NCBI GenBank assembly: GCA_002269645.1
Contig: NIVC01000183.1
Span: forward strand, 1 to 64,000
Direction: 5' to 3'
Source: Macrostomum lignano
Lineage: Eukaryota
Length of the DNA stretch: 64,000 nt
Positions within the stretch are counted from its first letter, which is position 1. Every line of letters starts with the position of its first letter. The notes under the pieces were generated by a model. The model was given only the letters and a program-made list of their open reading frames with translations, did no database searches and was not told where the DNA came from. Positions 20,979-55,776 of the stretch are shown piece by piece. A program made the position numbers and the translations under genes.

Positions 20979-21095
20979 CTGATTTTCCAATTCAACATTG
21001 AGCAGACTGATATTGCCAGTGATGACTATCCATCTGGCGTCCTTAGGAGAGATGTCAGCTCTGTAGCTGGAGACTATTCGCTTGTTGACTACAAG
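20979..21095 (-). CDS. Giant gene B exon (117 nt, phase 0-0): end of the last galectin-like domain
   Basis: ttgcag|CTT GTA GTC AAC ... AAT CAG|gtaatt; LVVNKRIVSSYRADISPKDARWIVITGNISLLNVELENQ fits the galectin V.VNG..L.I.GD..L..V pattern. The final exon downstream was not resolved. Confidence 0.7.
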
Positions 21096-21170
21096 CTGCA
21101 ATGTAGCGGCTTCTTAAACTGTGATCACAATCTGTGCTCTGAACTAACAACCAGAGCACAGTGTTTTACT

Positions 21171-21397
21171 GAGGCTTGGAATGTTAGATTGAGGCTTGGA
21201 ATGTTAGATTGAGGCTTGGAATGTTAGATTGAGGCTTGGAATGTTAGAATGAGGCTTGAAATGTTAGAATGAGGCTTGGAATGTTAGATTGAGGCTTGGA
21301 ATGTTAGAATGAGGCTTGAAATGTTAAATTGAGGCTTGGAATGTTAGATTGAGGCTTGGAATGTTAGAATGAGGCTTGGAATGTTAAATTGAGGCTT
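21171..21397. repeat. 20-bp tandem array (gaggcttggaatgttagatt), ~11 copies
   Basis: Direct inspection. Confidence 0.97.
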
Positions 21398-21408
21398 GCA
21401 ATTGAAGT

Positions 21409-22757
21409 ATCAACTATCGGACAGGGAAATCAACTATCGGACAGGGAAATCAACTATCGGACAGGATAAGCAACTATCGGACAGGGAAATCAACTATCGG
21501 ACAGGGAAATCAACTATCGGACAGGATAAGCAACTATCGGACAGGATAAGCAACTATCGGACAGGGAAATCAACTATCGGACATGGTAAGCAACGATCGG
21601 ACAGGATAAGCAACTATCGGACAGGGTAAGCAACTATTGGACAGGGAAATCAACTATCGGACAGGGTAAGCAACTATTGGACGGGGAAATCAACTATCGG
21701 ACAGGATAAGCAACTATCGGACAGGGAAATCAACTATCGGAAATGGTAAGCAACGATCGGACAGGATAAGCAACTATCGGACAGGATAAGCAACTATCGG
21801 ACAGGGTAAGCAACTATTGGACAGGGAAATCAACTATCGGAAATGGTAAGCAACGATCGGACAGGATAAGCAACTATCGGACAGGATAAGCAACTATCGG
21901 ACAGGGTAAACAACTATTGGACAGGGAAATCAACTATCGGACAGGATAAGCAACTATCGGACAGGGAAATCAACTATCGGACAGGATAAGCAACTATCGG
22001 ACAGGGTAAGCAACGATCGGACAGGATAAGCAACTATCGGACAGGGAAATCAACTATCGGACATGGTAAGCAACGATCGGACAGGATAAGCAACTATCGG
22101 ACAGGATAAGCAACTATCGGACAGGGTAAGCAACTATTGGACAGGGAAATCAACTATCGGACAGGATAAGCAACTATCGGACAGGGAAATCAACTATCGG
22201 ACAGGGAAATCAACTATCGGACAGGGAAATCAACTATCGGACAGGGAAATCAACTATCGGACAGGGAAATCAACTATCGGACAGGGAAATCAACTATCGG
22301 ACAGGGAAATCAACTATCGGACAGGATAAGCAACTATCGGACAGGGAAATCAACGATCGGACAGGGAAATCAACGATCGGACAGGGAAATCAACTATCGG
22401 ACAGGGAAATCAACTATCGGACAGGGTAAGCAACTATCGGACAGGGAAATCAACATTTGGACAGGGAAATCAACGATCGGACAGGGAAATCAACGATCGG
22501 ACAGGGAAATCAACTATCGGACAGGGAAATCAACGATCGGACAGGGAAATCAACTATCGGACAGGGAAATCAACTATCGGACAGGGAAATCAACTATCGG
22601 ACAGGGAAATCAACTATCGGACAGGGTAAGCAACTATCGGACAGGGAAATCAACATTTGGACAGGGAAATCAACGATCGGACAGGGAAATCAACGATCGG
22701 ACAGGGAAATCAACTATCGGACAGGGAAATCAACGATCGGACAGGGAAATCAACTTT
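21409..22757. repeat. 20-bp tandem array (acagggaaatcaactatcgg / acaggataagcaactatcgg), ~67 copies, intronic
   Basis: Exact 20-bp phase kept over ~1.35 kb. Confidence 0.98.
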
Positions 22758-22773
22758 TTGCTTTGCCACTCAC

Positions 22774-22984
22774 TTTGCAATCGCCGTTATCCGCCAGCAG
22801 TAGGTCGATGGTTCGAATCTCGCTAAACAGCGGCACCGGGCACAGCTCAGCCACTCGAGTCTGGCGGGCGTCGTTCATCCAGGCCAGGGCCGCCTGCTGG
22901 CCGCTGTCGGTCAGGCAGAACTCGCAGATCAGCGGCTTGACGCCATCCGGATCGGCGCCGATGGCCAGCGAAACGGTGCGGCTG
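22774..22984 (-). CDS. Giant gene B exon (211 nt, phase 2-0)
   Basis: tttgcag|C AGC CGC ACC ... TGC AAA|gtgagt; SRTVSLAIGADPDGVKPLICEFCL...IRTIDLLLADNGDCK. Confidence 0.75.
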
Positions 22985-23054
22985 CTGCAAATAGGAAATT
23001 CTCAAGAAAATGAGAACGTTTCCCATCGAAAGAAGCTAAGCTGATGGGCGCAGT

Positions 23055-23140
23055 TGCATGTCTCAAGCCGCGCACGGAATCGAACCCCGGGCACTTCTGC
23101 GCTGCAGAATCAGACAGACGCGTTAACCGCTGATCTACTT
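23055..23140 (-). mobile_element. tRNA-derived SINE head, intronic
   Basis: Minus strand has an A-box-like TAGATCAGCGG and B box GGTTCGATTCC; no intact cloverleaf. Confidence 0.55.
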
Positions 23141-23423
23141 TGCCCTCATTTTTATTAAACATTAAAATAACATACACGTGTAAGACATGCGTCATACTAC
23201 TTGATAAGTAGCGTAGACTATCTAATTCGACTTTTTGAGGTAGCGCCCTACTTCATCAGTGGAAAACGGCTTGAAACACCAAGTTAAACTGTACCGGGTT
23301 TGCTTGGTCGTTGCTTCCATATCTCTTCCAAACCTGATGTCTCTTTCATCTTAAGATTTTCTGTAAAAAGGCCAAACTGCATGGGATACTGAAATCTGGA
23401 CCCTGGGCCTAATCGACACTTAC

Positions 23424-24010
23424 GCTCCGTAGTTGCCCCCGTCGGTCTCGGCCAGGTCGGCCCCGTCCGACAGACCGAGACGGATCAACCGGCCCGGCCG
23501 ACTCGGATCCATCGGCGGCAGGCGATTGGTGTAGGGAAGCCACAGGCTGGCTGGGAAGCTGACAAACAGAAAGGCGGTGGCGGCGCCAGCCAGGTGCAGA
23601 TGAGTCACCAGGTCCGGGTCGATCCGGTGGCGCAGGCTGGCGTTGTGCCCGCTGTCCAACACTACGTAGAAGTCCTTCAAGCGTCGGACGATCGTCGTCT
23701 CGAAGGCGAAGCCGTCCCTATCTTTTGCGTCGCTGCGGCTGGTGGCGTCCACTGCTTCGTCGCTCTGCTGACCGTTGACGATGGCGCTGAGGGCCAGACA
23801 GCCGACGGCGCCGCTGTCCGATTCTCTGCTGGGCGCCACCCGGGCAAGGAGGGCAAAGTCCGCTGAGCTCGGGTCAGCGCCGGTTCGAAGCGAAATTCGA
23901 CAGTTGTTGCCGGCCGGCATCGAAGCGGCCGACGGCAGCAACCGGGCCCAGATTCGAATCTGGCCGCCTACTGGCAGCTGCTTGGGAAGAGCCGTCAGTG
24001 GATTGGCTCG
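23424..24010 (-). CDS. Giant gene B exon (587 nt, phase 0-2): one complete galectin-like domain plus the start of the next
   Basis: ccctccag|CGA GCC AAT ... GGA GC|gtaagt; LPKQLPVGGQIRIW...FETTIVRRLKDFYVVLDSGHNASLRHRIDPDLVTHLHLAG. Confidence 0.8.
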
Positions 24011-24039
24011 CTGGAGGGAATGATGGGGCGAGGTAGTAA

Positions 24040-24343: not shown

Positions 24344-24460
24344 CATCTCCTTGATTTTGAAATCCTCCAGCATTAGATCGCCTTCAATGTACAGGCTCTT
24401 CACTCTTCTAGCATCCAACTTCATCAAGTACGTCATTATGTACTCGCCATTAATATGAAT
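24344..24460 (-). CDS. Giant gene B exon (117 nt, phase 0-0): end of a galectin-like domain
   Basis: aattcag|ATT CAT ATT AAT GGC ... GAG ATG|gtgaga; IHINGEYIMTY...VKSLYIEGDLMLEDF is the clearest galectin-type segment. Confidence 0.8.
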
Positions 24461-25001
24461 CTGAATTCGGAGTTAACGAGAAATCTGCCTAATTGAAACT
24501 CATTATTAATGCATTTCAGACACAATAAACGAACACCGATCAGTCAATAATTCCTATTGGCACATATACTATAAATTACAAAATGTACTGTACTTCCAGA
24601 AAATGTAGGCGCACAGTTTCCCCCATACTTCTCCAATACGGCAGCATTTAGTCCTTGAGTTCTGGATAATGGTTTTGTCTATGGTACTTCCGAGCGACAA
24701 ATGGGTGGTTAGACGAAGGTCGGAACTCGGGATAATGGGTGGCGTACGAGTGTGCTAAATTCAGCAACGCCTAGATCACGCGCACAAGTCTATGGCGTTG
24801 CTGGATTCAACGCAGCCTCCAGCCCATTTCTAGGAAAATAAAGTTTCGTGTCCTTCTACTTTAATTGCCTATGCAAGTACATTAAAATGGTCTGATCTAT
24901 GTTGTCTAGTTCTATTATTAGACGCGGTGGATTAGCAGGTATCAGAGTGGAAAAACAGTCTGACCTAAAGACTACTTAAGAAACCTGAAACATTAAACTA
25001 C

Positions 25002-25543
25002 CCACATGCCTGTACATGCCCTACAAGGAGAATTCCAGGGCTATACTCGTACTTCTGCCTTCCTGTTAGCTGCGACTCCATTTTCGCCTTAATTGGCTGC
25101 AGCACCCCTGAGAAACTCACCCGAACCACCTGGCCGTGAATTGTCAGCAAAACGCTGCGCAGTTTCGCCAGCTGGTTTAAACCGCGTTTCTCCATCTCCT
25201 TGACGAAGCCGCCACCGTCGTCGCCGCCGTTGCTGCTGCAAGTGTCGTCCGGATCGGCTCGACCTACCGTAGCTGTCAGGCTGGCGATGCTGAGCGAGCA
25301 GGTCATGGCCGCGCCGTCGGCCAGGCCGAACAGGAGGCCGGTGGAGCTGCTGTCCGGCCGCAGGCCGAGCCGCACAGATTCAACCAGGCTGAGCGGGCAG
25401 GCCAGGCGTTCGCGTAGCGGCAGCTCCAGGCGTTCGTGAAACTCCACGCTAGTGTACTCGCAGTCGGGGTGCAGCACCAGGTGAGTGAAGTCGGACACCG
25501 GAATGTGATGCGGTAACACGCATTCCGTATCGGCGAGAGCCGT
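25002..25543 (-). CDS. Giant gene B exon: end of one galectin-like domain and most of the next
   Basis: ttttcag|ACG GCT CTC (phase 0); LPHHIPVSDFTHLVLHPDCEYTSVEF then LPLRERL..SVRLGL..VRVSFSG..ILLVGHV. The 3' donor is uncertain. Confidence 0.7.
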
Positions 25544-25765
25544 CTGAAAACCGGTTGAAAAAATAGTTCGTCAGGTTAAACCTACGCCAACTCAATGCCA
25601 AGACAGATCCTTCCAGATTGCAAACAACTTTTCGTCGCCTTTCGAATTAAACAAGAGTTGGATGAAAAAAACGGTGGACTCCTCATTAAATCCTCTTCAA
25701 ACTCCCAGCTGTTCTGGTCTGCGGCTACTCGTCAGATGCCCAAGAAGTAAGGTTAGAAATCTTAC

Positions 25766-25979
25766 GCTGAGTCCCAGTCGCTTGAAACAAATCACCAGAC
25801 GAAACTCGTCGTTCTGCTTTGGTGACAGCAGCGCCTTCGCCTCGCAGACGGGTTGCCCCCCAATTAGCTGGCAGGTGTGCATCAGCGACGGCTGGTCGGC
25901 TCCGCCAGGGAAGGAAATCAGCAACTCGAAGGCCTGGGCACCGGGCGAGTAATCGAGATTTTCCAAAGACAATTTAAGC
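25766..25979 (-). CDS. Giant gene B exon (214 nt, phase 2-0)
   Basis: cttcag|G CTT AAA ... CTC AGC|gtaaga; LKLSLENL..AFELLISF..DEFRLVICFKRLGLS. Confidence 0.75.
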
Positions 25980-26075
25980 CTGAAGAGCAGCAGTGTGATT
26001 TTTACCAATATTTTAAACGCTTGTTCAGCGCATGAAAAACTATATTTAAAGATACATTTTAACAGTTAGTCTCAC

Positions 26076-26167
26076 CCAGCTGAAGAGTAGTTGGTCATTC
26101 GGCCGTAAATCACAATGCTGTGTCCATACCGTATTTGCACTGGGAGTCGCGCTCGGAATGGAATTAT
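26076..26167 (-). CDS. Giant gene B exon (92 nt, phase 0-2): start of the first C-terminal galectin-like domain
   Basis: atacag|ATA ATT CCA TTC ... GCT GG|gtgaga; IIPFRARLPVQIRYGHSIVIYG matches PF...L...L..G..I.I.G. Confidence 0.75.
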
Positions 26168-26221
26168 CTGTATAGTTCAAAAATATATATATAGAGCTTC
26201 ATGTCACCTGTAGAATATCAC

Positions 26222-26322: not shown

Positions 26323-27870
26323 ATTCGGAGACATTCCATCTAGGTCACATCCTTGTTCTCCCTCGATTTCCTATTCCGAGACATCCCATTTAGGTCATAT
26401 CCTTGTTCTCCCTCGATTTCCTATTCCGAGACATTCCATCTAGGTCACATCATTGTTCTCCCTCGATTCCCTATCCCGAGACATTCCATTTAGGTCACAT
26501 CCTTGTTCTCCCTCGATTTCCTATTCCGAGACATTCCATCTAGGTCACATCCTTGTTCTCCCTCGATTTCCTATTCCGAGACATCCCATTTAGGTCATAT
26601 CCTTGTTCTCCCTCGATTTCCTATTCCGAGACATTCCATCTAGGTCACATCATTGTTCTCCCTCGATTCCCTATCCCGAGACATTCCATTTAGGTCACAT
26701 CCTTGTTCTCCCTCGATTTCCTATTCCGAGACATTCCATCTAGGTCACATCCTTGTTCTCCCTCGATTTCCTATTCCGAGACATCCCATTTAGGTCATAT
26801 CCTTGTTCTCCCTCGATTTCCTATTCCGAGACATTCCATCTAGGTCACATCATCGTTCTCCCTCGATTCCCTATCCCGAGACATTCCATTTAGGTCACAT
26901 CCTTGTTCTCCCTCGATTTCCTATTCCGAGACATTCCATCTAGGTCACATCCTTGTTCTCCCTCGATTCCCTATCCCGAGACATTCCATCTAGGTCACAT
27001 CATTGTTCTCCCTCGATTTCCTATCCCGAGACATTCCATTTAGGTCACATCCTTGTTCTCCCTCGATTTCCTATTCCGAGACATTCCATCTAGGTCACAT
27101 CATTGTTCTCCCTCGATTCCCTATCCCGAGACATTCCATTTAGGTCACATCCTTGTTCTCCCTCGATTTCCTATTCCGAGACATTCCATCTAGGTCACAT
27201 CCTTGTTCTCCCTCAATTTCCTATTCCTAGATATTCAATTTAGGTCACATCATTGTTCTCCCTCGATTTCCTATCCCGAGACATTCAATTTAGGTCACTC
27301 TTGTTCTCCCTCGATTTCCTATTCCGAGACATTCCATCTAGGTCACATCCTTGTTCTCCCTCGATTTCCTATTCCGAGACATTCCATCTAGGTCACATCC
27401 TTGTTCTCCCTCGATTTCCTATTCCTAGATATTCAATTTAGGTCACATCATTGTTCTCCCTCGATTTCCTATCCCGAGACATTCAATTTAGGTCACTCTT
27501 GTTCTCCCTCGATTTCCTATTCCGAGACATTCCATCTAGGTCACATCCTTGTTCTCCCTCGATTTCCTATTCCGAGACATTCCATCTAGGTCACATCATT
27601 GTTCTCCCTCGATTTCCTATCCCGAGACATTCCATCTAGGTCACATCATTGTTCTCTCTCGATTTCCTATCCCGAGACATTCCATCTAGGTCACATCCTT
27701 GTTCTCCCTCGATTTCCTATTCCGAGACATTCCATCTAGGTCACATCATTGTTCTCCCTCGATTTCCTATCCCGAGACATTCCATCTAGGTCACATCATT
27801 GTTCTCTCTCGATTTCCTATCCCGAGACATTCCATCTAGGTCACATCCTTGCTATCCCTCGATTTCCTAT
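26323..27870. repeat. 50-bp tandem array, ~31 copies, filling an intron; 4-mer higher-order repeat
   Basis: cgagacattccatctaggtcacatccttgttctccctcgatttcctattc; variant acatcccatt recurs at 26381, 26581 and 26781. Confidence 0.97.
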
Positions 27871-27886: not shown

Positions 27887-28531
27887 CGGCTTCAGAGTTG
27901 AGAATCCTTTGGCATTTTTTCGCCGCTCCAAATCTTCAATGGCAGATTCGTTCGTCAGCTGGAACTCCAGAGTGTCCCCATGGCTGCCGTCGCCGAATTG
28001 CAGAGAATTGCTGAGCTCTCTGTCTGAGCCGGCTCGAGGCCCGTCCCCGCTAGGGCTGTTAAACGCCTCGCTTTGCCAGTGGTCTCCAGAGGGCTTTTTC
28101 CAGTTGACTTGCCGCCTACTCAACCTTAACGATGCTGGCTCAGCTGAGAACTTCTTAGCCAGTCGCTGTTTGAACGAATCTTCGCTACAGCTGCTGCTGT
28201 CGTCGCTGCTGCTGCCGTCAGTTTCGCTGCTGCAACCGGAGGCCAGACGGTCACCTTTCACAAATCCGCTGGCGCCTTGCAAGTTATAGGAACTGTATCG
28301 AAATACTCCGAACTTGGCAGCGTCTTGAGCCCTGGATGGCTTCTGATTCGCTCCAGGCATCTTGGTTAGTGTCGAAATCATAACATCAGTGCCGTTGGAC
28401 ATTATGGCATGGTGGTCTGCTTCTTCGACATGCGTGTTTGGACCGATCGGCTCCGGACTGCGACCATCCCGTAATTTGCTCTGCTCGGTCCATTTGGAAT
28501 TGAGCGTAGCGTTGGTCTGATTAGCGGCAAT
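27887..28531 (-). CDS. Giant gene B linker exon (645 nt, phase 0-0), Ser-rich
   Basis: ttcatag|ATT GCC GCT ... AAG CCG|gtaaga; extends track ORF 27872-28402 upstream without a stop. Confidence 0.8.
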
Positions 28532-29235: not shown

Positions 29236-32200
29236 ACTGCCGCCATCAAAGAAGTACGGAGGCTCGTCATTGTCCGCCTCGCTGTCCTCGTCCTCACTGG
29301 CAGACAGGCGACCCGGCTGCTGGACAACATCATCCAACTGGCCACGAGTGCCTGTGTCGGCGCCTTCTGCTGCAGAACTGGCAGACTCGATTACTGACTG
29401 GAGCGATTCTCTGGATTCGCACTCTTGGCGCACCAGTGTTGGGGTTCCATTGAGCACTTTTGGCAAACTGATTTCATGCGCAGTTGTAGCGGCACTTATC
29501 TCAATTGCAGTCAATTCAGGATCTGAAGAATTTTCTGCTTGCTCTTGTTCAAGCTCTGCTTGTTGAACCTCGGTTTGGACAAGTGCCTTATCATTCGAGA
29601 GTTTGTTATCGTTGCTTAGAGGTGAAGAATCCCGCAAATTTTCGTTGTTGGAACGTAGCGAATTCGAATCTTCTAAGCTGCACGACTTGCGTGAAGGCTG
29701 GTTGTCGTAGTAGTGAGACACAGTACTCGAGGGTGAAACGGTATCTACCACGCTACTGTTGGTATTTGAGTCAAACGGCTTATCCTCGCTGTGACCATCT
29801 TTAAAGCACGTTTCCACTTCTTCTGATTCAATGTCTTCTGGCTGAAAGCCTCCCTGAGTGACAGTGTGTACAGACAAACTGTGATTTTGATCCAATGACG
29901 CGGTCTCTGACTGAGGAGAGGCACCTTCAAATTCAGGACTGTTTTGACTAGTGTGCGATGCAGTTGATTTATCCGACTCTTCAGCTAGGTCCCTGTCGAG
30001 CAAGCCTTTGACTGACCTTTCAGTTTGAAGAGTCACATTTTCGACACCTGCAGCTGCTGGGGTTCTATTTGAAAAATCTGTCGACGTGTCGTCTAGACAA
30101 GTGAAATCCAACTTTCTCATCGGTTCCATGCCTTCTTTGATGGTCGGCTTTGCATAACTATAAGATGGCACGCTAGTGTTAGGATTATCATTGAACTCAA
30201 GGCAGCCTGATATATCTATGGCTTCACTTGGAAAATTAATTTTTTTAGTGTCCTTTTCAAGATCGCTTAAAGCTTTCTCTTGCCCCGAAGACACTTCCTG
30301 CAATTCAATCGAAATCTGTTGGTCCTCGTACTCGATCCGGACCTCATCGACGTCCTGGTCGAGGTGCTTCACCAAGTTCTTTATGTCGTCGACTTCTGCA
30401 CCAATGGACTCATCGCGCTGCTCAGCATCAGTACCCTGCTGCAGCTTTCGAGCAAGCACGCTTTCCTCGGTCTCTTCAGCGAGATCGGCTGACTGGCTTT
30501 CGTGACGAAGCTCTCGGATCGGAGGCTCCGAAATTTCGATTGACAGTTGCTGATCCTGTGTCGAAGCTTCTTTTGTTGCTGCATCGCTACTTCCGACTTG
30601 CTCCTGGTTGTCCTGTTCGCTACTTTTGGTTTGACTAACTGTATCTGGGTCTCTTGACATTGACGGCACTTGTGTTTTGTTAGTCTCGCTGTCATTTCTC
30701 TGTGCTAGTTGACTTGATTGCTTCCTACGGAAGCTCGCCTCGTTTTCCGCGTTTCCAGCTGTGTCCAAGTCGGAGACATTATACGATCCTCTGTGTCGCT
30801 TAAAAACACCCAGGAACTTTCCGAACACGTTCTTTTTGTGCTTTGGTGGGTATGATGACTCGAGTGGCATCGAGCTTAGAGAATCAGAGCTCTGACTTTT
30901 ATCGTCGTGCGTTCCAGTCACACTTACACTGTGGGGTCTCGTCTGAGGTTTTTCTCTCTTTTCCGAGCTCTCACCAGATGTGTGTCGCAGCCTTACTTTT
31001 GATTCGATGGGCGGAAACTCTGCACTTCCCAAAGACAAGCGTTTTACTATTTTTGATGACTTTGGCTCGGCCAGATCTATCGACCTACTCTCGTTTCTTT
31101 CGTCGACGGGTGCGTCCTTAATATGATGCAGGAGATCGTCTGACTGCCAGGATCGATCGCTCTCCTTGGAAATTTGACTATCGCGATCAAACGAGTGCCC
31201 GTAGCGGGGAGGCTCGTGGATGATAGGCTCCGGCAATTCCATCGAAATCTGTTGGTCCTCGTACTCGATCCGGACCTCATCGACGTCCTGGTCGAGGTGC
31301 TTCACCAAGTTCTTTATGTCGTCGACTTCTGCACCAATGGACTCATCGCGCTGCTCAGCATCAGTACCCTGCTGCAGGTTTCGAGCAAGCACGCTTTCCT
31401 CGGTCTCTTCAGCGAGATCGGCTGACTGGCTTTCGTGACGAAGCTCTCGGATCGGAGGCTCCGGCAATTCCATCGAAATCTGTTGGTCCTCGTACTCGAT
31501 CCGGACCTCATCGACGTCCTGGTCGAGGTGCTTCACCAAGTTCTTTATGTCGTCGACTTCTGCACCAATGGACTCATCGCGCTGCTCAGCATCAGTACCC
31601 TGCTGCAGGTTTCGAGCAAGCACGCTTTCCTCGGTCTCTTCAGCGAGATCGGCTGACTGGCTTTCGTGACGAAGCTCTCGGATCGGAGGCTCCGGCAATT
31701 CCATCGAAACCTGTTGGTCCTCGTACTCGATCCGGACCTCATCGACGTCCTGGTCGAGGTGCTTCACCAAGTTCTTTATGTCGTCGACTTCTGCACCAAT
31801 TGACTCATCGCGCTGCTCAGCATCAGTACCCTGCTGCAGGTTTCGAGCAAGCACGCTTTCCTCGGTCTCTTCAGCGAGATCGGCTGACTGGCTTTCGTGA
31901 CGAAGCTCTCGGATCGGAGGCTCCGGCAATTCCATCGAAACCTGTTGGTCCTCGTACTCGATCCGGACCTCATCGACGTCCTGGTCGAGGTGCTTCACCA
32001 AGTTCTTTATGTCGTCGACTTCTGCACCAATTGACTCATCGCGCTGCTCAGCATCAGTACCCTGCTGCAGGTTTCGAGCAAGCACGCTTTCCTCGGTCTC
32101 TTCAGCGAGATCGGCTGACTGGCTTTCGTGACGAAGCTCTCGGATCGGAGGCTCCGGCAATTCCATCGAAACCTGTTGGTCCTCGTACTCGATCCGGACC

Positions 32201-47200: not shown

Positions 47201-50200
47201 CGCTTTCCTCGGTCTCTTCAGCGAGATCGGCTGACTGGCTTTCGTGACGAAGCTCTCGGATCGGAGGCTCCGGCAATTCCATCGAAACCTGTTGGTCCTC
47301 GTACTCGATCCGGACCTCATCGACGTCCTGGTCGAGGTGCTTCACTAAGTTCTTTATGTCGTCGACTTCTGCACCAATGGACTCATCGCGCTGCTCAGCA
47401 TCAGTACCCTGCTGCAGCTTTCGAGCAAGCACGCTTTCCTCGGTCTCTTCAGCGAGATCGGCTGACTGGCTTTCGTGACGAAGCTCTCGGATCGGAGGCT
47501 CCGGCAATTCCATCGAAACCTGTTGGTCCTCGTACTCGATCCGGACCTCATCGACGTCCTGGTCGAGGTGCTTCACCAAGTTCTTTATGTCGTCGACTTC
47601 TGCACCAATGGACTCATCGCGCTGCTCAGCATCAGTACCCTGCTGCAGGTTTCGAGCAAGCACGCTTTCCTCGGTCTCTTCAGCGAGATCGGCTGACTGG
47701 CTTTCGTGACGAAGCTCTCGGATCGGAGGCTCCGGCAATTCCATCGAAACCTGTTGGTCCTCGTACTCGATCCGGACCTCATCGACGTCCTGGTCGAGGT
47801 GCTTCACCAAGTTCTTTATGTCGTCGACTTCTGCACCAATGGACTCATCGCGCTGCTCAGCATCAGTACCCTGCTGCAGCTTTCGAGCAAGCACGCTTTC
47901 CTCGGTCTCTTCAGCGAGATCGGCTGACTGGCTTTCGTGACGAAGCTCTCGGATCGGAGGCTCCGAAATTTCGATTGACAGTTGCTGATCCTGTGTCGAA
48001 GCTTCTTTTGTTGCTGCATCGCTACTTCCGACTTGCTCCTGGTTGTCCTGTTCGCTACTTTTGGTTTGACTAACTGTATCTGGGTCTCTTGACATTGACG
48101 GCACTTGTGTTTTGTTAGTCTCGCTGTCATTTCTCTGTGCTAGTTGACTTGATTGCTTCCTACGGAAGCTCGCCTCGTTTTCCGCGTTTCTAGCTGTGTC
48201 CAAGTCGGAGACATTATACGATCCTCTGTGTCGCTTAAAAACACCCAGGAACTTTCCGAACACGTTCTTTTTGTGCTTTGGTGGGTATGATGACTCGAGT
48301 GGCATCGAGCTTAGAGAATCAGAGCTCTGACTTTTATCGTCGTGCGTTCCAGTCACACTTACACTGTGGGGTCTCGTCTGAGGTTTTTCTCTCTTTTCCG
48401 AGCTCTCACCAGATGTGTGTCGCAGCCTTACTTTTGATTCGATGGGCGGAAACTCTGCACTTCCCAAAGACAAGCGTTTTACTATTTTTGATGACTTTGG
48501 CTCGGCCAGATCTATCGACCTACTCTCGTTTCTTTCGTCGACGGGTGCGTCCTTAATATGATGCAGGAGATCGTCTGACTGCCAGGATCGATCGCTCTCC
48601 TTGGAAATTTGACTATCGCGATCAAACGAGTGCCCGTAGCGGGGAGGCTCGTGGATGATAGGCTCCGGCAATTCCATCGAAATCTGTTGGTCCTCGTACT
48701 CGATCCGGACCTCATCGACGTCCTGGTCGAGGTGCTTCACCAAGTTCTTTATGTCGTCGACTTCTGCACCAATGGACTCATCGCGCTGCTCAGCATCAGT
48801 ACCCTGCTGCAGGTTTCGAGCAAGCACGCTTTCCTCGGTCTCTTCAGCGAGATCGGCTGACTGGCTTTCGTGACGAAGCTCTCGGATCGGAGGCTCCGGC
48901 AATTCCATCGAAACCTGTTGGTCCTCGTACTCGATCCGGACCTCATCGACGTCCTGGTCGAGGTGCTTCACCAAGTTCTTTATGTCGTCGACTTCTGCAC
49001 CAATGGACTCATCGCGCTGCTCAGCATCAGTACCCTGCTGCAGGTTTCGAGCAAGCACGCTTTCCTCGGTCTCTTCAGCGAGATCGGCTGACTGGCTTTC
49101 GTGACGAAGCTCTCGGATCGGAGGCTCCGAAATTTCGATTGACAGTTGCTGATCCTGTGTCGAAGCTTTTTTTGTTGCTGCATCGCTACTTCCGACTTGC
49201 TCCTGGTTGTCCTGTTCGCTACTTTTGGTTTGACTAACTGTATCTGGGTCTCTTGACATTGACGGCACTTGTGTTTTGTTAGTCTCGCTGTCATTTCTCT
49301 GTGCTAGTTGACTTGATTGCTTCCTACGGAAGCTCGCCTCGTTTTCCGCGTTTCTAGCTGTGTCCAAGTCGGAGACATTATACGATCGTCTGTGTCGCTT
49401 AAAAACACCCAGGAACTTTCCGAACACGTTCTTTTTGTGCTTTGGTGGGTATGATGACTCGAGTGGCATCGAGCTTAGAGAATCAGAGCTCTGACTTTTA
49501 TCGTCGTGCGTTCCAGTCACACTTACACTGTGGGGTCTCGTCTGAGGTTTTTCTCTCTTTTCCGAGCTCTCACCAGATGTGTGTCGCAGCCTTACTTTTG
49601 ATTCGATGGGCGGAAACTCTGCACTTCCCAAAGACAAGCGTTTTACTATTTTTGATGACTTTGGCTCGGCCAGATCTATCGACCTACTCTCGTTTCTTTC
49701 GTCGACGGGTGCGTCCTTAATATGATGCAGGAGATCGTCTGACTGCCAGGATCGATCGCTCTCCTTGGAAATTTGACTATCGCGATCAAACGAGTGCCCG
49801 TAGCGGGGAGGCTCGTGGATGATAGGCTCCGGCAATTCCATCGAAATCTGTTGGTCCTCGTACTCGATCCGGACCTCATCGACGTCCTGGTCGAGGTGCT
49901 TCACCAAGTTCTTTATGTCGTCGACTTCTGCACCAATGGACTCATCGCGCTGCTCAGCATCAGTACCCTGCTGCAGGTTTCGAGCAAGCACGCTTTCCTC
50001 GGTCTCTTCAGCGAGATCGGCTGACTGGCTTTCGTGACGAAGCTCTCGGATCGGAGGCTCCGGCAATTCCATCGAAACCTGTTGGTCCTCGTACTCGATC
50101 CGGACCTCATCGACGTCCTGGTCGAGGTGCTTCACCAAGTTCTTTATGTCGTCGACTTCTGCACCAATGGACTCATCGCGCTGCTCAGCATCAGTACCCT

Positions 50201-53200
50201 GCTGCAGGTTTCGAGCAAGCACGCTTTCCTCGGTCTCTTCAGCGAGATCGGCTGACTGGCTTTCGTGACGAAGCTCTCGGATCGGAGGCTCCGAAATTTC
50301 GATTGACAGTTGCTGATCCTGTGTCGAAGCTTCTTTTGTTGCTGCATCGCTACTTCCGACTTGCTCCTGGTTGTCCTGTTCGCTACTTTTGGTTTGACTA
50401 ACTGTATCTGGGTCTCTTGACATTGACGGCACTTGTGTTTCGTTAGTCTCGCTGTCATTTCTCTGTGCTAGTTGACTTGATTGCTTCCTACGGAAGCTCG
50501 CCTCGTTTTCCGCGTTTCCAGCTGTGTCCAAGTCGGAGACATTATACGATCCTCTGTGTCGCTTAAAAACACCCAGGAACTTTCCGAACACGTTCTTTTT
50601 GTGCTTTGGTGGGTATGATGACTCGAGTGGCATCGAGCTTAGAGAATCAGAGCTCTGACTTTTATCGTCGTGCGTTCCAGTCACACTTACACTGTGGGGT
50701 CTCGTCTGAGGTTTTTCTCTCTTTTCCGAGCTCTCACCAGATGTGTGTCGCAGCCTTACTTTTGATTCGATGGGCGGAAACTCTGCACTTCCCAAAGACA
50801 AGCGTTTTACTATTTTTGATGACTTTGGCTCGGCCAGATCTATCGACCTACTCTCGTTTCTTTCGTCGACGGGTGCGTCCTTAATATGATGCAGGAGATC
50901 GTCTGACTGCCAGGATCGATCGCTCTCCTTGGAAATTTGACTATCGCGATCAAACGAGTGCCCGTAGCGGGGAGGCTCGTGGATGATAGGCTCCGGCAAT
51001 TCCATCGAAATCTGTTGGTCCTCGTACTCGATCCGGACCTCATCGACGTCCTGGTCGAGGTGCTTCACCAAGTTCTTTATGTCGTCGACTTCTGCACCAA
51101 TGGACTCATCGCGCTGCTCAGCATCAGTACCCTGCTGCAGGTTTCGAGCAAGCACGCTTTCCTCGGTCTCTTCAGCGAGATCGGCTGACTGGCTTTCGTG
51201 ACGAAGCTCTCGGATCGGAGGCTCCGGCAATTCCATCGAAACCTGTTGGTCCTCGTACTCGATCCGGACCTCATCGACGTCCTGGTCGAGGTGCTTCACC
51301 AAGTTCTTTATGTCGTCGACTTCTGCACCAATGGACTCATCGCGCTGCTCAGCATCAGTACCCTGCTGCAGCTTTCGAGCAAGCACGCTTTCCTCGGTCT
51401 CTTCAGCGAGATCGGCTGACTGGCTTTCGTGACGAAGCTCTCGGATCGGAGGCTCCGGCAATTCCATCGAAACCTGTTGGTCCTCGTACTCGATCCGGAC
51501 CTCATCGACGTCCTGGTCGAGGTGCTTCACCAAGTTCTTTATGTCGTCGACTTCTGCACCAATGGACTCATCGCGCTGCTCAGCATCAGTACCCTGCTGC
51601 AGCTTTCGAGCAAGCACGCTTTCCTCGGTCTCTTCAGCGAGATCGGCTGACTGGCTTTCGTGACGAAGCTCTCGGATCGGAGGCTCCGGCAATTCCATCG
51701 AAACCTGTTGGTCCTCGTACTCGATCCGGACCTCATCGACGTCCTGGTCGAGGTGCTTCACCAAGTTCTTTATGTCGTCGACTTCTGCACCAATGGACTC
51801 ATCGCGCTGCTCAGCATCAGTACCCTGCTGCAGCTTTCGAGCAAGCACGCTTTCCTCGGTCTCTTCAGCGAGATCGGCTGACTGGCTTTCGTGACGAAGC
51901 TCTCGGATCGGAGGCTCCGGCAATTCCATCGAAACCTGTTGGTCCTCGTACTCGATCCGGACCTCATCGACGTCCTGGTCGAGGTGCTTCACCAAGTTCT
52001 TTATGTCGTCGACTTCTGCACCAATGGACTCATCGCGCTGCTCAGCATCAGTACCCTGCTGCAGCTTTCGAGCAAGCACGCTTTCCTCGGTCTCTTCAGC
52101 GAGATCGGCTGACTGGCTTTCGTGACGAAGCTCTCGGATCGGAGGCTCCGAAATTTCGATTGACAGTTGCTGATCCTGTGTCGAAGCTTTTTTTGTTGCT
52201 GCATCGCTACTTCCGACTTGCTCCTGGTTGTCCTGTTCGCTACTTTTGGTTTGACTAACTGTATCTGGGTCTCTTGACATTGACGGCACTTGTGTTTTGT
52301 TAGTCTCGCTGTCATTTCTCTGTGCTAGTTGACTTGATTGCTTCCTACGGAAGCTCGCCTCGTTTTCCGCGTTTCTAGCTGTGTCCAAGTCGGAGACATT
52401 ATACGATCGTCTGTGTCGCTTAAAAACACCCAGGAACTTTCCGAACACGTTCTTTTTGTGCTTTGGTGGGTATGATGACTCGAGTGGCATCGAGCTTAGA
52501 GAATCAGAGCTCTGACTTTTATCGTCGTGCGTTCCAGTCACACTTACACTGTGGGGTCTCGTCTGAGGTTTTTCTCTCTTTTCCGAGCTCTCACCAGATG
52601 TGTGTCGCAGCCTTACTTTTGATTCGATGGGCGGAAACTCTGCACTTCCCAAAGACAAGCGTTTTACTATTTTTGATGACTTTGGCTCGGCCAGATCTAT
52701 CGACCTACTCTCGTTTCTTTCGTCGACGGGTGCGTCCTTAATATGATGCAGGAGATCGTCTGACTGCCAGGATCGATCGCTCTCCTTGGAAATTTGACTA
52801 TCGCGATCAAACGAGTGCCCGTAGCGGGGAGGCTCGTGGATGATAGGCTCCGGCAATTCCATCGAAATCTGTTGGTCCTCGTACTCGATCCGGACCTCAT
52901 CGACGTCCTGGTCGAGGTGCTTCACCAAGTTCTTTATGTCGTCGACTTCTGCACCAATGGACTCATCGCGCTGCTCAGCATCAGTACCCTGCTGCAGGTT
53001 TCGAGCAAGCACGCTTTCCTCGGTCTCTTCAGCGAGATCGGCTGACTGGCTTTCGTGACGAAGCTCTCGGATCGGAGGCTCCGGCAATTCCATCGAAATC
53101 TGTTGGTCCTCGTACTCGATCCGGACCTCATCGACGTCCTGGTCGAGGTGCTTCACCAAGTTCTTTATGTCGTCGACTTCTGCACCAATGGACTCATCGC

Positions 53201-54163
53201 GCTGCTCAGCATCAGTGCCTTGCTGCTGCTTTGGAATAGTCGTGGCGTCTTTGGTGGGATTCAATAGCGTTGTCGATGGCAATCCACTGGATTTTTCGTC
53301 TCTTTTTTGGGGTCGTTTTTGCTGGAATTGATGAAGTTTTGAGAATTTCATCATAGATTTGATCGATGATGGGGTTCCGCTTTGGCTGAGATGGCTTTTA
53401 TGTTTTCGCGTAAGTTTTGTGGATTTACTATGTTCCTGCTCATATTTAAATAATCGTATTTCTTCTTTGCTTGGACGCTCGTCAACTGTCACCGCGAGAC
53501 ATTCATAGGTGTCGATTTGGATACTCATATTTTCGTTTTTTCTTTGAAAATTCTTGACGTGGGATGTTTTTACACCAGTTTCATTCTTGTTGTCGTCGTC
53601 ATTTGCTTTGGATACGATTTCTCTGCCAGTTCGCAACATGACTGTCTCAATTGCTTCCTTTGCTGGATCGTCTAATTCCAACCAGGCAGACTCAATGACG
53701 TCTTTACCTACGTTGTTTGCTGACGTTTTCCTGACGTTCTCCTGAGCTTTCGCGTTGGCTTCATTAACGTTAACTGTTTGATGCGTGTCTCGTTTGTACA
53801 AAGCTGTTGAAAATTTCGGCTCAATGAAAGTTTTCGAATCTACCGGATCAAATTCTACCACGCTGCTGAAGTTTGAGCTTGGTTTGATGTAGGCCGTGTC
53901 TGCGTTCCTAAGTTGACATCGTCGTAGCCTTGCATTCTCGGCATCAAGATCCGATTTCGGCATCGTTTGAACACTGCTATGCGAGATTTCGTGGTTCAGT
54001 CTATCGTCATTTTTGAGTTCGCATTCGCTTTCTTCGCTGAAAATGGGGATCGGCTTCCAGATTGAGTTCTCAACTCTAGGCAGTGAGAGGCGGAGTCGCT
54101 TGACGTGACTCGGCGTGCCGGGTTGCCTTGCCGAATGTACTGTAATTTGGCGCATAGAATTGT
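29236..54163 (-). CDS. Giant gene B giant exon, 24,928 bp (~8,310 codons after restoring four 1-nt deletions)
   Basis: Acceptor cttatag|AC AAT TCT ATG (phase 1) and donor GGC AGT|gtaagc (phase 0). Five track ORFs abut at frameshifts near 38628, 41648, 43961 and 45402; length +4 nt gives the exact phase. Confidence 0.8.
30300..53230 (-). repeat. Coding array: ~66 x 231-bp (77-aa) A units and 11 x 702-bp (234-aa) B modules
   Basis: B-to-B spacings of 1164, 1626 and 1857 bp equal 702 + n x 231 (n = 2, 4, 5); two long runs of ~16 and ~17 A units. Confidence 0.95.
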
Positions 54164-54218
54164 CTATAAGTTAAGCGTGAAGATGATTAAAATTGATAAC
54201 AGCCTGGCAGAAGCTCAC

Positions 54219-54390
54219 CGAGCTGGACATTTAAATACGGGTTCTCCGGTTCTGTGGCAACTTTTGGCTCTTCGGAGTCGCAAATCTCCAGCTCGGTGAA
54301 GTCGGCCTCTCCGCCCAGTATAACGGTGCAGATTGCCGAGTAGTTCCCGTTGTGGCTGAGCTCCGCCAGGTGCTTTTCTTGTAGGCTTAT
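54219..54390 (-). CDS. Giant gene B exon (172 nt, phase 0-1): end of the N-terminal galectin-like domain
   Basis: ttttag|ATA AGC CTA ... CTC G|gtgagc; ISLQEKHLAELSHNGNYSAICTVILGGEADFTELEI; joins the giant exon across a 55-nt intron (G+AC=Asp). Confidence 0.8.
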
Positions 54391-55232
54391 CTAAAAAATT
54401 AATCACATTTCTATGGTGCGCTCTCAGACTACTTGCTGATTCAAATGATCGTCTCTTTGATTAGAATATTTTGAAGCCAGATTTATCGTATCAATATTGC
54501 AATTGCAACGTATTGTAAGACTTTATTCGGCGAAGTACATCAGGTACTTGTATCTGCTCCGGTTTATTCAGAGAATCTACAGAGGTCCATTCAGTAGTTT
54601 CTAGTGGTCCTTGATGTGATTGTTCACCCATTGTCCACAACAGTTAGTCTGCATTCACAATCAAACGGTTCCTGTCCAGTTTAGGACTTTTCCCCGAACG
54701 GGACCGGGTGAAGCGTTCGAAACTGTCAGGTTTGCATCTGGAAACGCCACAATATTTTGTTTCGAACGTGCCAACCTGCTGAAGCGGAACCAGACCGAAA
54801 TCGCTTGATTGTGAAAGCAGCATTACTCTTGATGAAATTTCAATCTCCCCTCAGGTTTGAGTACTCAACACATAGCCAGAAAATTATTTCATGACTGTTC
54901 CGTCAATGGTTCGATTCTACGACTATTTATACCTGTCCCCAATCGCTGGTAGTGACAATTTCCTGTGGTGAAATCGCAAAAAATCAATTAAACAGCTGAA
55001 CATTGGTTGTTTAAGGCTCAAACCAATTGGGTAAGATTTGCGGCAAAAATAAGTTTGTGTTCTTGATTTAGTGTGATTCGGACGCTACTCAGTAGTTACA
55101 GTATTACGCTCGTATTACAGGTTAAGATAGACATTAAACGCATTTTCTGGCTTTTCTGGCGTAAATAGATGTCAAAATAATTTTGAAAAACATATCATAT
55201 AGACAGCTATGAAATAATTTTGGCTAACTCAC

Positions 55233-55425
55233 ATCGTAGCCGAGCGGTTGCACGGTAACTTTGATGACAAAGGAGTACGGCGTTACAATCACTTCGCTGA
55301 GTCTTCCGCGCCTGTCTGTCTGCTTGCCTTTGCTTCGATAACTGATCTCAAACTGGCCGTTGCTGCTCAAGCTAATGTTTATAGATTCTAACTGCCAGTT
55401 TTCGGCTGAGAGGGTGACATTGAGG
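55233..55425 (-). CDS. Giant gene B exon (193 nt, phase 2-0)
   Basis: ttttcag|C CTC AAT GTC ... TAC GAT|gtgagt; LNVTLSAEN...PYSFVIKVTVQPLGYD. Confidence 0.8.
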
Positions 55426-55538
55426 CTGAAAAGAAAACAGTGGGCATTGACTGCTACGGTCTAGCGGTTTCTATGGAGTGTGTAAGAAAAAGTGGCTTGA
55501 AAAGTAAAACAACAAACAAGTATAACAAATCTACTTAC

Positions 55539-55618
55539 TACTGTCCGTGCAGAATGCCTTTGGCTACGACACCTTCGCCAACAAACAGCTCGCTGGACAT
55601 CTTGTGCTCTATGTGGCT
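55539..55618 (-). CDS. Giant gene B exon (80 nt, phase 0-2)
   Basis: ctttcag|AGC CAC ATA ... CAG TA|gtaagt; ELFVGEGVVAKGILHGQY. Confidence 0.75.
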
Positions 55619-55692
55619 CTGAAAGTGAGGGTGCACTCGTATCTGTGCTTTTCCGTCTGCACTACTCTCATTGTGCAATTTTCCTGACTTAC

Positions 55693-55776
55693 ACTATCGG
55701 ACCATTGACTCTCCGGTGTCACTCGATGCTCCGTGTTTAATTCCGAGGCCCTGTCGGGCTCGCGAAATTTCATCAT
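55693..55776 (-). CDS. Candidate first coding exon of giant gene B (MMKFREPDR...WSDS)
   Basis: Phase-0 donor GAT AGT|gtaagt. ATG at 55776 in an aaaagcATG context is a guess; the frame is open further upstream. Confidence 0.5.

What the first reader, a model, noticed from the sequence alone, without database searches (positions are those of the whole stretch)
20979..55776. Giant (>9,300 aa) galectin-fold dumbbell protein hidden across fragmented ORFs
Canonical splice sites chain in phase from 55776 through a galectin-like domain, into the 24.9-kb acidic repeat exon, a Ser-rich linker, and about five more tandem galectin-like domains. One gap (24461-25001) and the last exon are unresolved. The layout is folded head, very long acidic multivalent spacer, multi-domain tail, and no signal peptide is visible. 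I know of no described family with this architecture. It suggests a giant intracellular scaffold or molecular ruler, analogous in design (not homology) to AHNAK or giant ankyrin isoforms.
Basis: partly seen in the sequence, partly recalled or inferred. Interest (0 to 1): 0.9.

Follow-up and report, generated by a model that had tools for sequence, protein, structure and literature searches.

The report
Giant acidic galectin-capped flatworm protein gene
The window holds a real gene of the flatworm Macrostomum lignano that very probably encodes a protein of about 9,300 residues: one galectin-like domain, about 8,300 residues of acidic repeats and disordered sequence, then four more galectin-like domains. 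Public databases hold it only in uncharacterised pieces, and its function is unknown.

Summary
The window is Macrostomum lignano contig NIVC01000183.1 (assembly Mlig_3_7). On the minus strand, 14 coding exons (55776 to 20769) chain through canonical GT-AG introns. Public gene models confirm head to giant exon, and giant exon to Ser-rich linker to tail.

The '24.9-kb exon' is not one ORF as assembled. Four single-base deletions, each CC to C, split it into five ORFs. The sister locus carries five more breaks of the same kind. There are no nonsense codons, and the assembly was Canu plus Pilon only, so these are probably consensus errors. Restoring four bases gives one ORF of 9,307 aa (1.05 MDa, pI 4.5, net charge about -1,130).

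The tail has four galectin-fold domains, not five. Public models use acceptors 54139 and 26167, not 54163 and 26308. All five domains are homologous to galectin carbohydrate-recognition domains (CRDs) by Pfam, HMMER, hhalign and AlphaFold+Foldseek. None keeps the canonical sugar-binding residues.

A paralogue (PAA47915.1) has the same head, disordered spacer and four-domain tail plan. No orthologue was found outside M. lignano. The function is untested. An end-capped polyanionic tether or scaffold is the best guess. This is a new variant of a known kind, of moderate interest.

The parts
55693..55776 (-). Coding exon 1. ATG at 55776-55774; product MMKFREPDRASELNTEHRVTPESQWSDS.
   Evidence: The exon chain reproduces the first 240 aa after the Met of public model P0023 exactly. 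The open upstream frame in P0023 has no ATG.
54219..55618 (-). Head galectin-fold domain, protein aa about 29-160. Encoded by exons 55618-55539, 55425-55233 and 54390-54219.
   Evidence: Exons. hhalign against a 24-sequence galectin CRD profile: E 4.1e-6 over 118 columns. hhalign against tail domain D1: E 2.1e-5. AlphaFold2 pLDDT 89. Foldseek: galectin-8 C-CRD, TM 0.80, E 6e-9. Pfam alone is only E 0.079.
29236..54139 (-). Giant exon, 24,904 nt as assembled. An alternative in-frame acceptor lies at 54163. It encodes about 380 aa of unique disordered sequence, the repeat array, and about 330 aa of unique acidic sequence.
   Evidence: Five abutting ORFs. Acceptor; donor at 29236. One ORF results after four bases are restored.
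30229..53012 (-). Two-tier tandem array. It has 65 A units (231 bp, 77 aa, net charge about -16) and 11 B units (702 bp, 234 aa, Ser-rich, each with a basic-hydrophobic patch KHKKNVFGKFLGVFKRHR), plus a 51-bp B remnant at 42565-42515.
   Evidence: TRF. Unit spacing. B copies are at least 99.4% identical, and the 65 A copies comprise 16 distinct sequences. Composition and charge-hydropathy.
45402..45402 (-). Frame break 1: one C lost from ATCATCCACGAG. Coordinate accurate to a few bases.
   Evidence: Alignment to an intact unit. ORF change 45261-54155 to 43873-45222.
43961..43961 (-). Frame break 2: one C lost from GAGACCGAGG.
41648..41648 (-). Frame break 3: one C lost from CCGATCCGAGAG.
38628..38628 (-). 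Frame break 4: the same deletion as break 3, at the same position in the unit.
27887..28531 (-). Ser-rich linker exon (215 aa). It contains an optional in-frame GT-AG intron of about 210 nt (about 28291-28082) that some models remove.
   Evidence: P0025 keeps the whole exon.
25436..26167 (-). Tail domain D1. Encoded by exons 26167-26076 and 25979-25766 and the start of exon 25543-25121.
   Evidence: Exon mapping. hhalign against galectin CRDs: E 1.3e-12 over 127 columns.
24344..25435 (-). Tail domain D2. Encoded by the rest of exon 25543-25121 and exon 24460-24344.
   Evidence: Pfam PF00337 stretch. hhalign E 1.8e-5. This is the best-modelled part of the AlphaFold2 tail model, with pLDDT 60-87.
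23555..24010 (-). Tail domain D3, within exon 24010-23424.
   Evidence: Pfam PF00337 covers profile positions 4-123 of 132. phmmer hit to galectin-8 in the PDB, E 0.004. hhalign E 1.4e-11.
20979..23554 (-). Tail domain D4. Encoded by the end of exon 24010-23424 and exons 22984-22774 and 21095-20979.
   Evidence: Exon mapping. hhalign E 1.6e-6 over the C-terminal 47 columns.
20769..20849 (-). Last coding exon (SLEQNDPTTFCGICCQMIQNRAKQLD, then stop). This is the ML2-model version. The sister-locus transcript model ends differently (VPTSRCSVS), so the 3' end is uncertain.
26323..27870 (.). Intronic 50-bp minisatellite, 31 copies, inside intron 27886-26168. The matching intron in the sister locus is only 427 nt, against 1,719 nt here.
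21170..22755 (.). Intronic 20-bp minisatellites (11.6 and 67.3 copies) inside intron 22773-21096. The array length differs between the two loci.

Best explanation
SHOWN:
- The region is one protein-coding locus of Macrostomum lignano (transcript family Mlig001996). It is one of two copies in the assembly that are about 97% identical.
- It has 14 coding exons on the minus strand with canonical introns.
- The product has one N-terminal galectin-fold domain and about 8,300 residues on the disordered side of the charge-hydropathy plot. Of the whole protein, 82% is a two-tier array of acidic 77-aa A units and Ser-rich 234-aa B units. A Ser-rich linker and four consecutive C-terminal galectin-fold domains follow.
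- There is no signal peptide and no TM segment.
- None of the five beta-sandwich domains keeps the canonical galectin sugar-binding residues (H-N-R, V-N, W-E-R).

INFERRED, likely:
- The four frame breaks are consensus errors of a PacBio/Canu assembly polished only with short reads.
- The true gene therefore encodes a single polypeptide of about 9,307 aa and 1.05 MDa, with pI 4.5 and net charge about -1,130.

INFERRED, mechanism, speculative:
- The protein works as an end-capped polyanionic tether. The 1 + 4 degenerate galectin domains act as protein-binding or non-canonical-ligand-binding anchors at the two ends.
- The centre is an extended, strongly hydrated spacer, up to about 3 micrometres if fully stretched.
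- The centre is a block polyampholyte: 65 acidic blocks interspersed with 12 basic-hydrophobic patches. It could bind cations or basic partners and self-associate weakly.
- The protein is most likely cytoplasmic, as galectins are when made.
For: Identity and gene structure:
- The window is NIVC01000183.1, positions 1-64000.
- The head exons reproduce P0023 exactly.
- The tail exons reproduce P0021 with 1176 of 1177 residues identical.
- All eight mapped tail-region introns, from the giant exon to exon 21095-20979, are GT-AG in both loci.
- The GenBank models are built from assembled transcripts: StringTie, TACO, TBONE and TransDecoder (PMC5730564).

Single ORF:
- Restoring four C's gives 27,924 nt with no other stop.
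- All 9 frame breaks in the two loci are 1-bp deletions in 2-3-nt homopolymers. There are no insertions and no nonsense codons.
- The assembly was Canu 1.4 plus Pilon only.

Domains:
- Pfam.
- A full HMMER scan of 1.84 billion proteins finds M. lignano paralogues first and true galectins next.
- hhalign with shuffled controls.
- AlphaFold2 plus Foldseek.
- No H.N.R or W..E.R string in any domain.

Architecture is conserved:
- Paralogue PAA47915.1 has a homologous head (BLASTP E 8e-12), about 1,000 aa of disordered sequence and a four-domain tail in one CDS.

The array is real:
- Substitutions fixed in every repeat of one locus are absent from the other, which indicates concerted evolution.

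Constraint:
- Linker and tail exons differ at 8 of 2,406 sites between the two loci. Introns differ by 1.4% and the unique acidic segment by 3.3%.
Against: - No public model and no read evidence available here spans head to tail for this gene.
- As assembled, the ORF is broken four times. Two of the breaks are the identical deletion at the same position in the unit. That could reflect a real variant spread by gene conversion.
- At this locus GenBank annotates only a 530-aa fragment in the stretch inspected (window 29741-51330).
- The AlphaFold2 tail model is of low confidence (mean pLDDT 50).
- The alignment used for the head model included classical galectins, so that model is partly circular.
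- The constraint signal rests on few substitutions: pN/pS is about 0.5 with 3 synonymous and 5 non-synonymous changes.
- Nothing here bears on expression site, localisation, ligands or phenotype. The mechanism rests on composition and analogy alone.
Confidence: 0.6

Rival explanations
1. Decaying duplicate. The frame breaks are real, and this copy (perhaps both copies) is a young pseudogene or encodes only truncated products. Examples would be head plus about 2,960 aa of repeats, or an internally initiated repeat-plus-tail protein like the 3,568-aa GenBank model.
For: The sequence as given has four frameshifts and the sister locus has five. Two breaks are identical, which fits spread of a real variant. 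The DV1 line carries extra chromosome copies and the assembly has much duplicated sequence (PMC5730564), so redundancy would tolerate gene loss.
Against: All nine lesions are 1-bp deletions in short homopolymers. There are no nonsense mutations or insertions, and every unit stays open in its own frame over about 25 kb. The assembly had no long-read consensus polishing. The tail exons are more conserved than the introns.
Confidence: 0.12
2. Two or more genes rather than one dumbbell. The head-plus-repeat and repeat-plus-tail parts are separate mature mRNAs, cut from one transcriptional unit by spliced-leader trans-splicing or driven by an internal promoter.
For: Every public model is a fragment: head models P0003 and P0023, tail models P0001, P0021 and P0025, and the internal fragment P0004. 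M. lignano has frequent trans-splicing, and about 7% of its assembled transcripts encode several proteins (PMC5730564).
Against: The fragments end inside the repeat, where short reads cannot be assembled, not at stops. After repair there is no stop codon between head and tail. The paralogue, which has a non-repetitive spacer, is annotated head-to-tail as one CDS.
Confidence: 0.1
3. Extracellular lectin or polyanion. The protein leaves the cell by a non-classical route or by cell lysis. Outside, it cross-links glycans or acts as a polyanionic matrix or counter-ion, for example for the extremely basic adhesive protein Mlig-ap1.
For: Galectins as a class lack signal peptides and yet act outside cells (general knowledge). 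Mollusc and fish multi-CRD galectins are the nearest non-flatworm hits. The M. lignano adhesion model postulates an unidentified negatively charged releasing factor for Mlig-ap1 (PMC6410801).
Against: All five domains lack the sugar-binding residues. A 1-MDa protein is a poor candidate for unconventional secretion. The adhesion paper predicts a small molecule. No expression data link this gene to gland cells.
Confidence: 0.1

Closest known systems
Sister copy and paralogues in M. lignano: PAA89866.1 (BOX15_Mlig001996g2, 3,568 aa), PAA47915.1 (Mlig025793g1, 1,637 aa, partial), PAA52624.1 (Mlig013397g1), A0A1I8GPB3
   Same: The sister locus is 96-97% identical, introns and the neighbouring IBR gene included. 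The paralogues share the four-domain tail at 31-35% identity. PAA47915.1 also has a homologous head. So the plan is a head, a long disordered spacer and four galectin-fold domains.
   Different: The paralogue spacer is about 1,000 aa, Lys/Gln/Ser-rich and not a tandem array. Here it is about 8,300 aa, acidic, and mostly a 65 + 11 unit array. In paralogue D1 the W..E.R motif survives (NRWTAEER); here it is lost. All of these proteins are uncharacterised.
Tandem-repeat and multi-CRD galectins: galectin-4, -8 and -9, Toxascaris leonina galectin, the four-CRD Patella protein KAK6181409.1, and fish 12- to 20-CRD lgals4-like proteins
   Same: Several galectin beta-sandwiches in one chain with no signal peptide. 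These are the best sequence and structure matches outside the flatworm family.
   Different: Those proteins keep H-N-R / V-N / W-E-R in nearly every CRD and have short linkers. Here all five sites are degenerate, and one domain is separated from the other four by about 8,500 residues.
Chimera-type galectin-3
   Same: A disordered, repetitive region is fused to a galectin domain, and multivalency comes from the disordered part (general knowledge).
   Different: The galectin-3 tail is about 120 aa, Pro/Gly-rich and N-terminal to one functional CRD. Here the disordered part is about 70 times longer, polyanionic, and capped at both ends.
Galectin-related proteins without lactose binding: GRIFIN, GRP/LGALSL, galectin-10
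   Same: Galectin fold with a degenerate sugar site. Chicken GRIFIN (5nld), human GRP (3b9c) and galectin-10 are among the Foldseek hits.
   Different: Those are small, single-domain proteins.
AHNAK and other giant repeat scaffolds (analogy only)
   Same: Small folded ends and a multi-thousand-residue central tandem array encoded by one giant exon, with no signal peptide (general knowledge).
   Different: No sequence relationship. No PDZ domain, and the repeat units are unrelated. AHNAK's repeats are not polyanionic.
Mlig-ap1 and Mlig-ap2, the giant adhesive proteins of the same species
   Same: They show that M. lignano makes repetitive proteins of 5,407 and 14,794 aa (PMC6410801).
   Different: Both are shown to be secreted by the adhesive gland cells, Cys-rich, and carry vWD, TSP-1, EGF and C-type lectin domains. 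Mlig-ap1 is extremely basic. This protein is acidic, Cys-poor (0.3%) and galectin-capped.

Membership tests
Galectins (PF00337, Gal-bind_lectin) | Sequence homology to the galectin CRD | tested here: met
   The tail scores 38.3 bits against a gathering cut-off of 22.1. HMMER hits to fish, eel and limpet galectins: E 3e-25 to 6.5e-4. hhalign of head and D1-D4 against a 24-CRD profile: E 4e-6, 1e-12, 2e-5, 1e-11 and 2e-6, with shuffled controls at 0.14-0.79. The head alone fails Pfam (E 0.079).
Galectins (PF00337, Gal-bind_lectin) | Galectin-type beta-sandwich fold | tested here: met
   Head model: pLDDT 89, TM 0.75-0.80 to galectin-8C, -9C and -3 CRDs. Tail model: pLDDT only 50, but its top Foldseek hits are tandem-repeat galectins at E 8e-12. 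Caveat: the head alignment contained classical CRDs.
Galectins (PF00337, Gal-bind_lectin) | Conserved carbohydrate-binding residues (His-Asn-Arg, Val-Asn, Trp-Glu-Arg) | tested here: not met
   Each of the five domains keeps at most 2 of 8 positions, against 6-8 of 8 in classical CRDs in the same alignment. No H.N.R or W..E.R string occurs in head or tail. The alignment is uncertain at this identity level.
Galectins (PF00337, Gal-bind_lectin) | Affinity for beta-galactosides | not testable with these tools
   Needs recombinant domains tested on lactose-agarose or glycan arrays.
Galectins (PF00337, Gal-bind_lectin) | No classical signal peptide | tested here: met
   The N-terminus is hydrophilic. 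The highest 19-residue Kyte-Doolittle window is 1.66, and it lies inside a beta-sandwich domain. No dedicated signal-peptide predictor was available.
Tandem-repeat-type galectins | Two or more CRDs in one polypeptide joined by a linker | tested here: met
   Four contiguous domains plus one distal domain. That all five sit on one polypeptide depends on repairing the four frame breaks.
AHNAK family | N-terminal PDZ domain and central repeats of about 128 aa | tested here: not met
   Pfam finds no PDZ or AHNAK-related family in the head, the unique regions or the repeats. The units here are 77 and 234 aa. The resemblance is an analogy of design only.
M. lignano head-spacer-four-galectin-domain family (Mlig001996, Mlig025793, Mlig013397; not a named family) | Homologous head domain, long disordered spacer, and a collinear four-domain tail | tested here: met
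   Head against the PAA47915.1 N-terminus: BLASTP E 8e-12. The tail aligns end to end with two paralogues at 31-35% identity. No member was found outside M. lignano in 1.84 billion representative proteins.

The most novel reading that the evidence does not exclude
This gene family defines a new class of megadalton 'end-capped polyanion' proteins. Degenerate galectin domains anchor the two ends of a micrometre-scale acidic block-polyampholyte. The protein would then act as a molecular ruler, an entropic spring, or the seed of a condensate or matrix for a flatworm-specific intracellular structure. Alternatively, it could be the polyanionic partner of the extremely basic adhesive protein Mlig-ap1 in granule packing or in release.
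Probability: 0.12. Interest if true: 0.75.

Novelty: new variant of a known kind. Interest (0 to 1): 0.5.

Why it matters
If the single 9,307-aa product is real, it is by far the largest galectin-fold protein seen in this work. The fish multi-CRD proteins found here reach about 3,200 aa. It would be a natural example of galectin domains re-used as sugar-independent end-caps on a giant polyanionic disordered chain.

It also shows how tandem arrays and unpolished long-read consensus errors fragment giant genes in annotations. This one gene appears in public databases as several unrelated-looking entries, misnamed 'CAP-Gly', 'SCAR', 'EMC1' and 'NPL domain' proteins.

M. lignano supports RNAi, in situ hybridisation and transgenesis, so the function can be tested directly.

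Tried and rejected
- The acceptor at 26308. It gives 34 aa and then a stop, and no public model uses it; all join 27887 to 26167.
- 'About five' tail domains. The tail is 613 aa, made of four units, and the paralogues also have four.

Searches with no useful result:
- Pfam on unspliced ORF fragments gave only sub-threshold galectin hits.
- Pfam on the A and B repeats, the unique regions and the linker gave only sub-threshold noise, such as DUF7084 and FKBP26_C.
- PDB sequence search: no hit for the head and none of meaning for the repeat.
- A profile search for more head homologues found only another M. lignano fragment.
- Literature and supplementary-table searches for the gene identifiers, or for galectin in M. 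lignano, returned nothing.

Results of limited value:
- AlphaFold2 of the whole tail with a 3-sequence alignment was of low confidence (pLDDT 50). It was used only through its Foldseek hits.
- Ka/Ks between the two loci is based on too few changes to be decisive.

Other points dismissed:
- UniProt names such as 'CAP-Gly domain-containing protein', 'Protein SCAR' and 'ER membrane protein complex subunit 1'. For the two models scanned here (P0003 and, through the tail, P0001/P0021) Pfam finds no such domain. The others were not scanned, but they overlap the same sequence, so the names are judged spurious.
- Long plus-strand ORFs inside the array, such as 35052-38654 (1,200 aa). They are antisense artefacts of a stop-free repeat.

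Full report
**Source.** The tail query hit UniProt entries of Macrostomum lignano at 78-82% BLASTP identity over the concatenated, unspliced query; the individual exons match at about 93-100%. An exact-protein look-up placed the window on GenBank contig NIVC01000183.1 of assembly GCA_002269645.1 (Mlig_3_7), and window coordinates equal record coordinates 1-64000. The assembly paper states that PacBio reads were assembled with Canu 1.4 and polished only with Pilon, using Illumina and RNA-seq reads. It also states that the annotation is a genome-guided transcriptome (StringTie, TACO, TBONE) with TransDecoder ORFs (PMC5730564). GenBank models of this assembly are therefore transcript-based, but repeats are hard for them.

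**Gene structure.** Mapping public proteins onto the window gives the following coding exons on the minus strand:
- 55776-55693
- 55618-55539
- 55425-55233
- 54390-54219
- 54139-29236 (the giant exon)
- 28531-27887
- 26167-26076
- 25979-25766
- 25543-25121
- 24460-24344
- 24010-23424
- 22984-22774
- 21095-20979
- 20849-20769

The head chain reproduces P0023 (A0A1I8GNL9) exactly over 240 residues. The C-terminal 1,177 residues match P0021 (A0A1I8GNN0) at 1,176 positions, apart from one optional in-frame intron in the linker exon. All eight introns mapped between the giant exon and exon 21095-20979 are GT-AG in this locus and in its sister locus.

- Models use acceptor 54139.
- Models join 27887 to 26167, not 26308.
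- The 'gap' is an intron between 25121 and 24460.
- The last exon is 20849-20769 in ML2-derived models. The transcript-based model at the sister locus ends in another frame, so the 3' end remains uncertain.

**The giant exon is broken as assembled.** The region holds five abutting ORFs in three frames: 2964, 449, 812, 1032 and 3116 aa. Alignment of the odd-length units to intact ones shows that each break is the loss of one C from a CC, near 45402, 43961, 41648 and 38628. The last two are the identical deletion.

The sister locus is L003 (NIVC01000133.1), which ends inside the array. It has five more breaks, all 1-bp deletions in runs of 2-3 identical bases. That makes nine deletions, no insertions and no nonsense codons. 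Restoring four bases yields a single 27,924-nt ORF. Given that the assembly had no long-read consensus polishing, I judge these to be consensus errors with a probability of about 0.8, but this is not proven.

**The conceptual product.** It is 9,307 aa and 1.05 MDa, with pI 4.47 and 23% Asp plus Glu. Net charge is about -1,130. There is no hydrophobic N-terminus and no TM-like window outside the beta-sandwich domains.

**Repeat anatomy.**
- There are 65 A units of 231 bp (77 aa, 23 acidic and 7 basic residues).
- There are 11 B units of 702 bp (234 aa, 23% Ser plus Thr). Each contains a basic-hydrophobic patch, KHKKNVFGKFLGVFKRHR. A 51-bp B remnant is also present.
- Runs of 1 to 17 A units separate the B units.
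- B copies are at least 99.4% identical, and the A copies comprise 16 distinct sequences.
- The array covers residues 553-8148, which is 82% of the protein.
- On the charge-hydropathy plot, the array, both unique flanks and the linker fall on the disordered side. The five end domains fall on the folded side.
- Two nucleotide positions are fixed in all units of this locus and differ in all units of the sister locus. This shows concerted evolution within each array, and that the two arrays were assembled separately.

**Domain identity.**
- Pfam PF00337 passes its threshold on the spliced tail (38.3 bits against 22.1).
- An exhaustive HMMER scan of 1.84 billion representative proteins with the 613-aa tail found only six proteins. 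They were the gene itself, two M. lignano paralogue clusters (E 5e-61 and 8e-38), and then multi-CRD galectins of a fish, an eel and a limpet (E 3e-25, 7.5e-8 and 6.5e-4).
- Profile-profile comparison against 24 classical CRDs gave E 4e-6 for the head over 118 columns. It gave 1e-12, 2e-5, 1e-11 and 2e-6 for D1 to D4. Column-shuffled controls gave 0.14-0.79.
- The head also matches tail domain D1 (E 2e-5).
- AlphaFold2 modelled the head at pLDDT 89, and Foldseek matched galectin-8C, -9C and -3 CRDs at TM 0.75-0.80. That alignment included classical CRDs, so it is supportive rather than independent.
- The tail model was poor (pLDDT 50), yet its best Foldseek hits are tandem-repeat galectins at E 8e-12.
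- None of the five domains keeps the canonical H-N-R / V-N / W-E-R residues. In the paralogues, D1 still has W..E.R.

These are therefore galectin-related domains with degenerate sugar sites.

**Relatives.**
- The sister locus carries PAA89866.1 (BOX15_Mlig001996g2, 3,568 aa). That model starts at an internal Met just after a frame break and runs through repeats, linker and tail. The locus is 96-97% identical to the window, including the introns and the neighbouring IBR gene.
- Paralogue PAA47915.1 is 5'-partial because its contig ends. It has a head homologous to ours (BLASTP E 8e-12), about 1,000 disordered residues, and the four-domain tail, all in one CDS. This shows independently that the dumbbell plan is a real gene architecture.
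- No member was found outside M. lignano.
- No paper or supplementary table examined mentions these genes.

**Constraint.** Between the two loci the linker and tail exons differ at 8 of 2,406 sites. Introns of conserved length differ by 1.4% and the unique acidic segment by 3.3%, with pN/pS about 0.5. The counts are small, so this is only mild support for purifying selection on the folded tail.

**Mechanism (inference).** The best-supported reading is a bipolar, multivalent tether.
- One degenerate galectin module at one end and four at the other would bind protein or non-canonical ligands.
- They are joined by a polyanionic disordered chain with a contour length of up to about 3 micrometres.
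- The alternation of strongly acidic blocks with basic-hydrophobic patches suggests cation or basic-partner binding and weak self-association.
- The missing signal peptide fits cytoplasmic synthesis. Because galectins can act outside cells, the site of action is open.

I put about 0.85 on the gene and its architecture, about 0.8 on a single ORF, and about 0.3 on the specific mechanism. The rivals are a young pseudogene, separate head and tail mRNAs, and an extracellular polyanion or lectin, including a link to the unidentified negatively charged releasing factor of the adhesion model (PMC6410801).

**Verdict.** The object is a new, extreme variant of galectin-related proteins and belongs to a small family so far found only in M. 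lignano. It is already public in uncharacterised and misnamed fragments. Interest is moderate.

Noticed in passing
window 14946-16796 (+): An open frame of about 600 aa encodes an IBR (RBR-type E3 ubiquitin ligase) domain protein (Pfam PF01485, E 5e-15). Its counterpart (618 aa) sits next to the sister copy of the giant gene, so the duplication covers at least both genes.
   Followed up: partly
window 60800-63100, e.g. 62538-63059 (-): Fragments of a retroelement. One ORF matches reverse transcriptase RVT_1 (E 5e-15), with several broken overlapping ORFs around it.
   Followed up: no
window 26323-27870, 21170-22755 and 24026-24242: Three introns of the gene carry minisatellites: 50 bp x 31, 20 bp x about 79, and 64 bp x 3.4. 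In the sister locus the intron carrying the 50-bp array is 427 nt against 1,719 nt here, and the intron carrying the 20-bp arrays is 2,763 nt against 1,678 nt.
   Followed up: partly
window 41648 and 38628: Two of the four frame breaks are the same deletion (GATCCGAG to GAT-CGAG) at the same position in the unit, about 3 kb apart. This could be a context-specific consensus error or a real variant copied within the array.
   Followed up: partly
window about 28291-28082 (-), inside the Ser-rich linker exon: This is an in-frame GT-AG segment of about 210 nt. Some public models (P0021, P0002) splice it out and P0025 retains it, so it may be an optional internal intron.
   Followed up: partly
public entries A0A1I8J923, A0A1I8HL23, A0A1I8GNL9 and A0A1I8FHR1: Fragments of this gene family carry automatic names: CAP-Gly domain-containing protein, Protein SCAR, ER membrane protein complex subunit 1, and NPL domain-containing protein. 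Pfam gave no family for A0A1I8J923 (P0003), the only one scanned here. The other names are judged spurious because the entries overlap sequence that was scanned.
   Followed up: partly
L002 19373-27176 (+), paralogue locus NIVC01004292.1: A MACPF-domain gene lies downstream of the paralogue PAA47915.1.
   Followed up: no
window 6257-7264 (-): An ORF of about 330 aa in a GC-rich stretch has no Pfam match.
   Followed up: no
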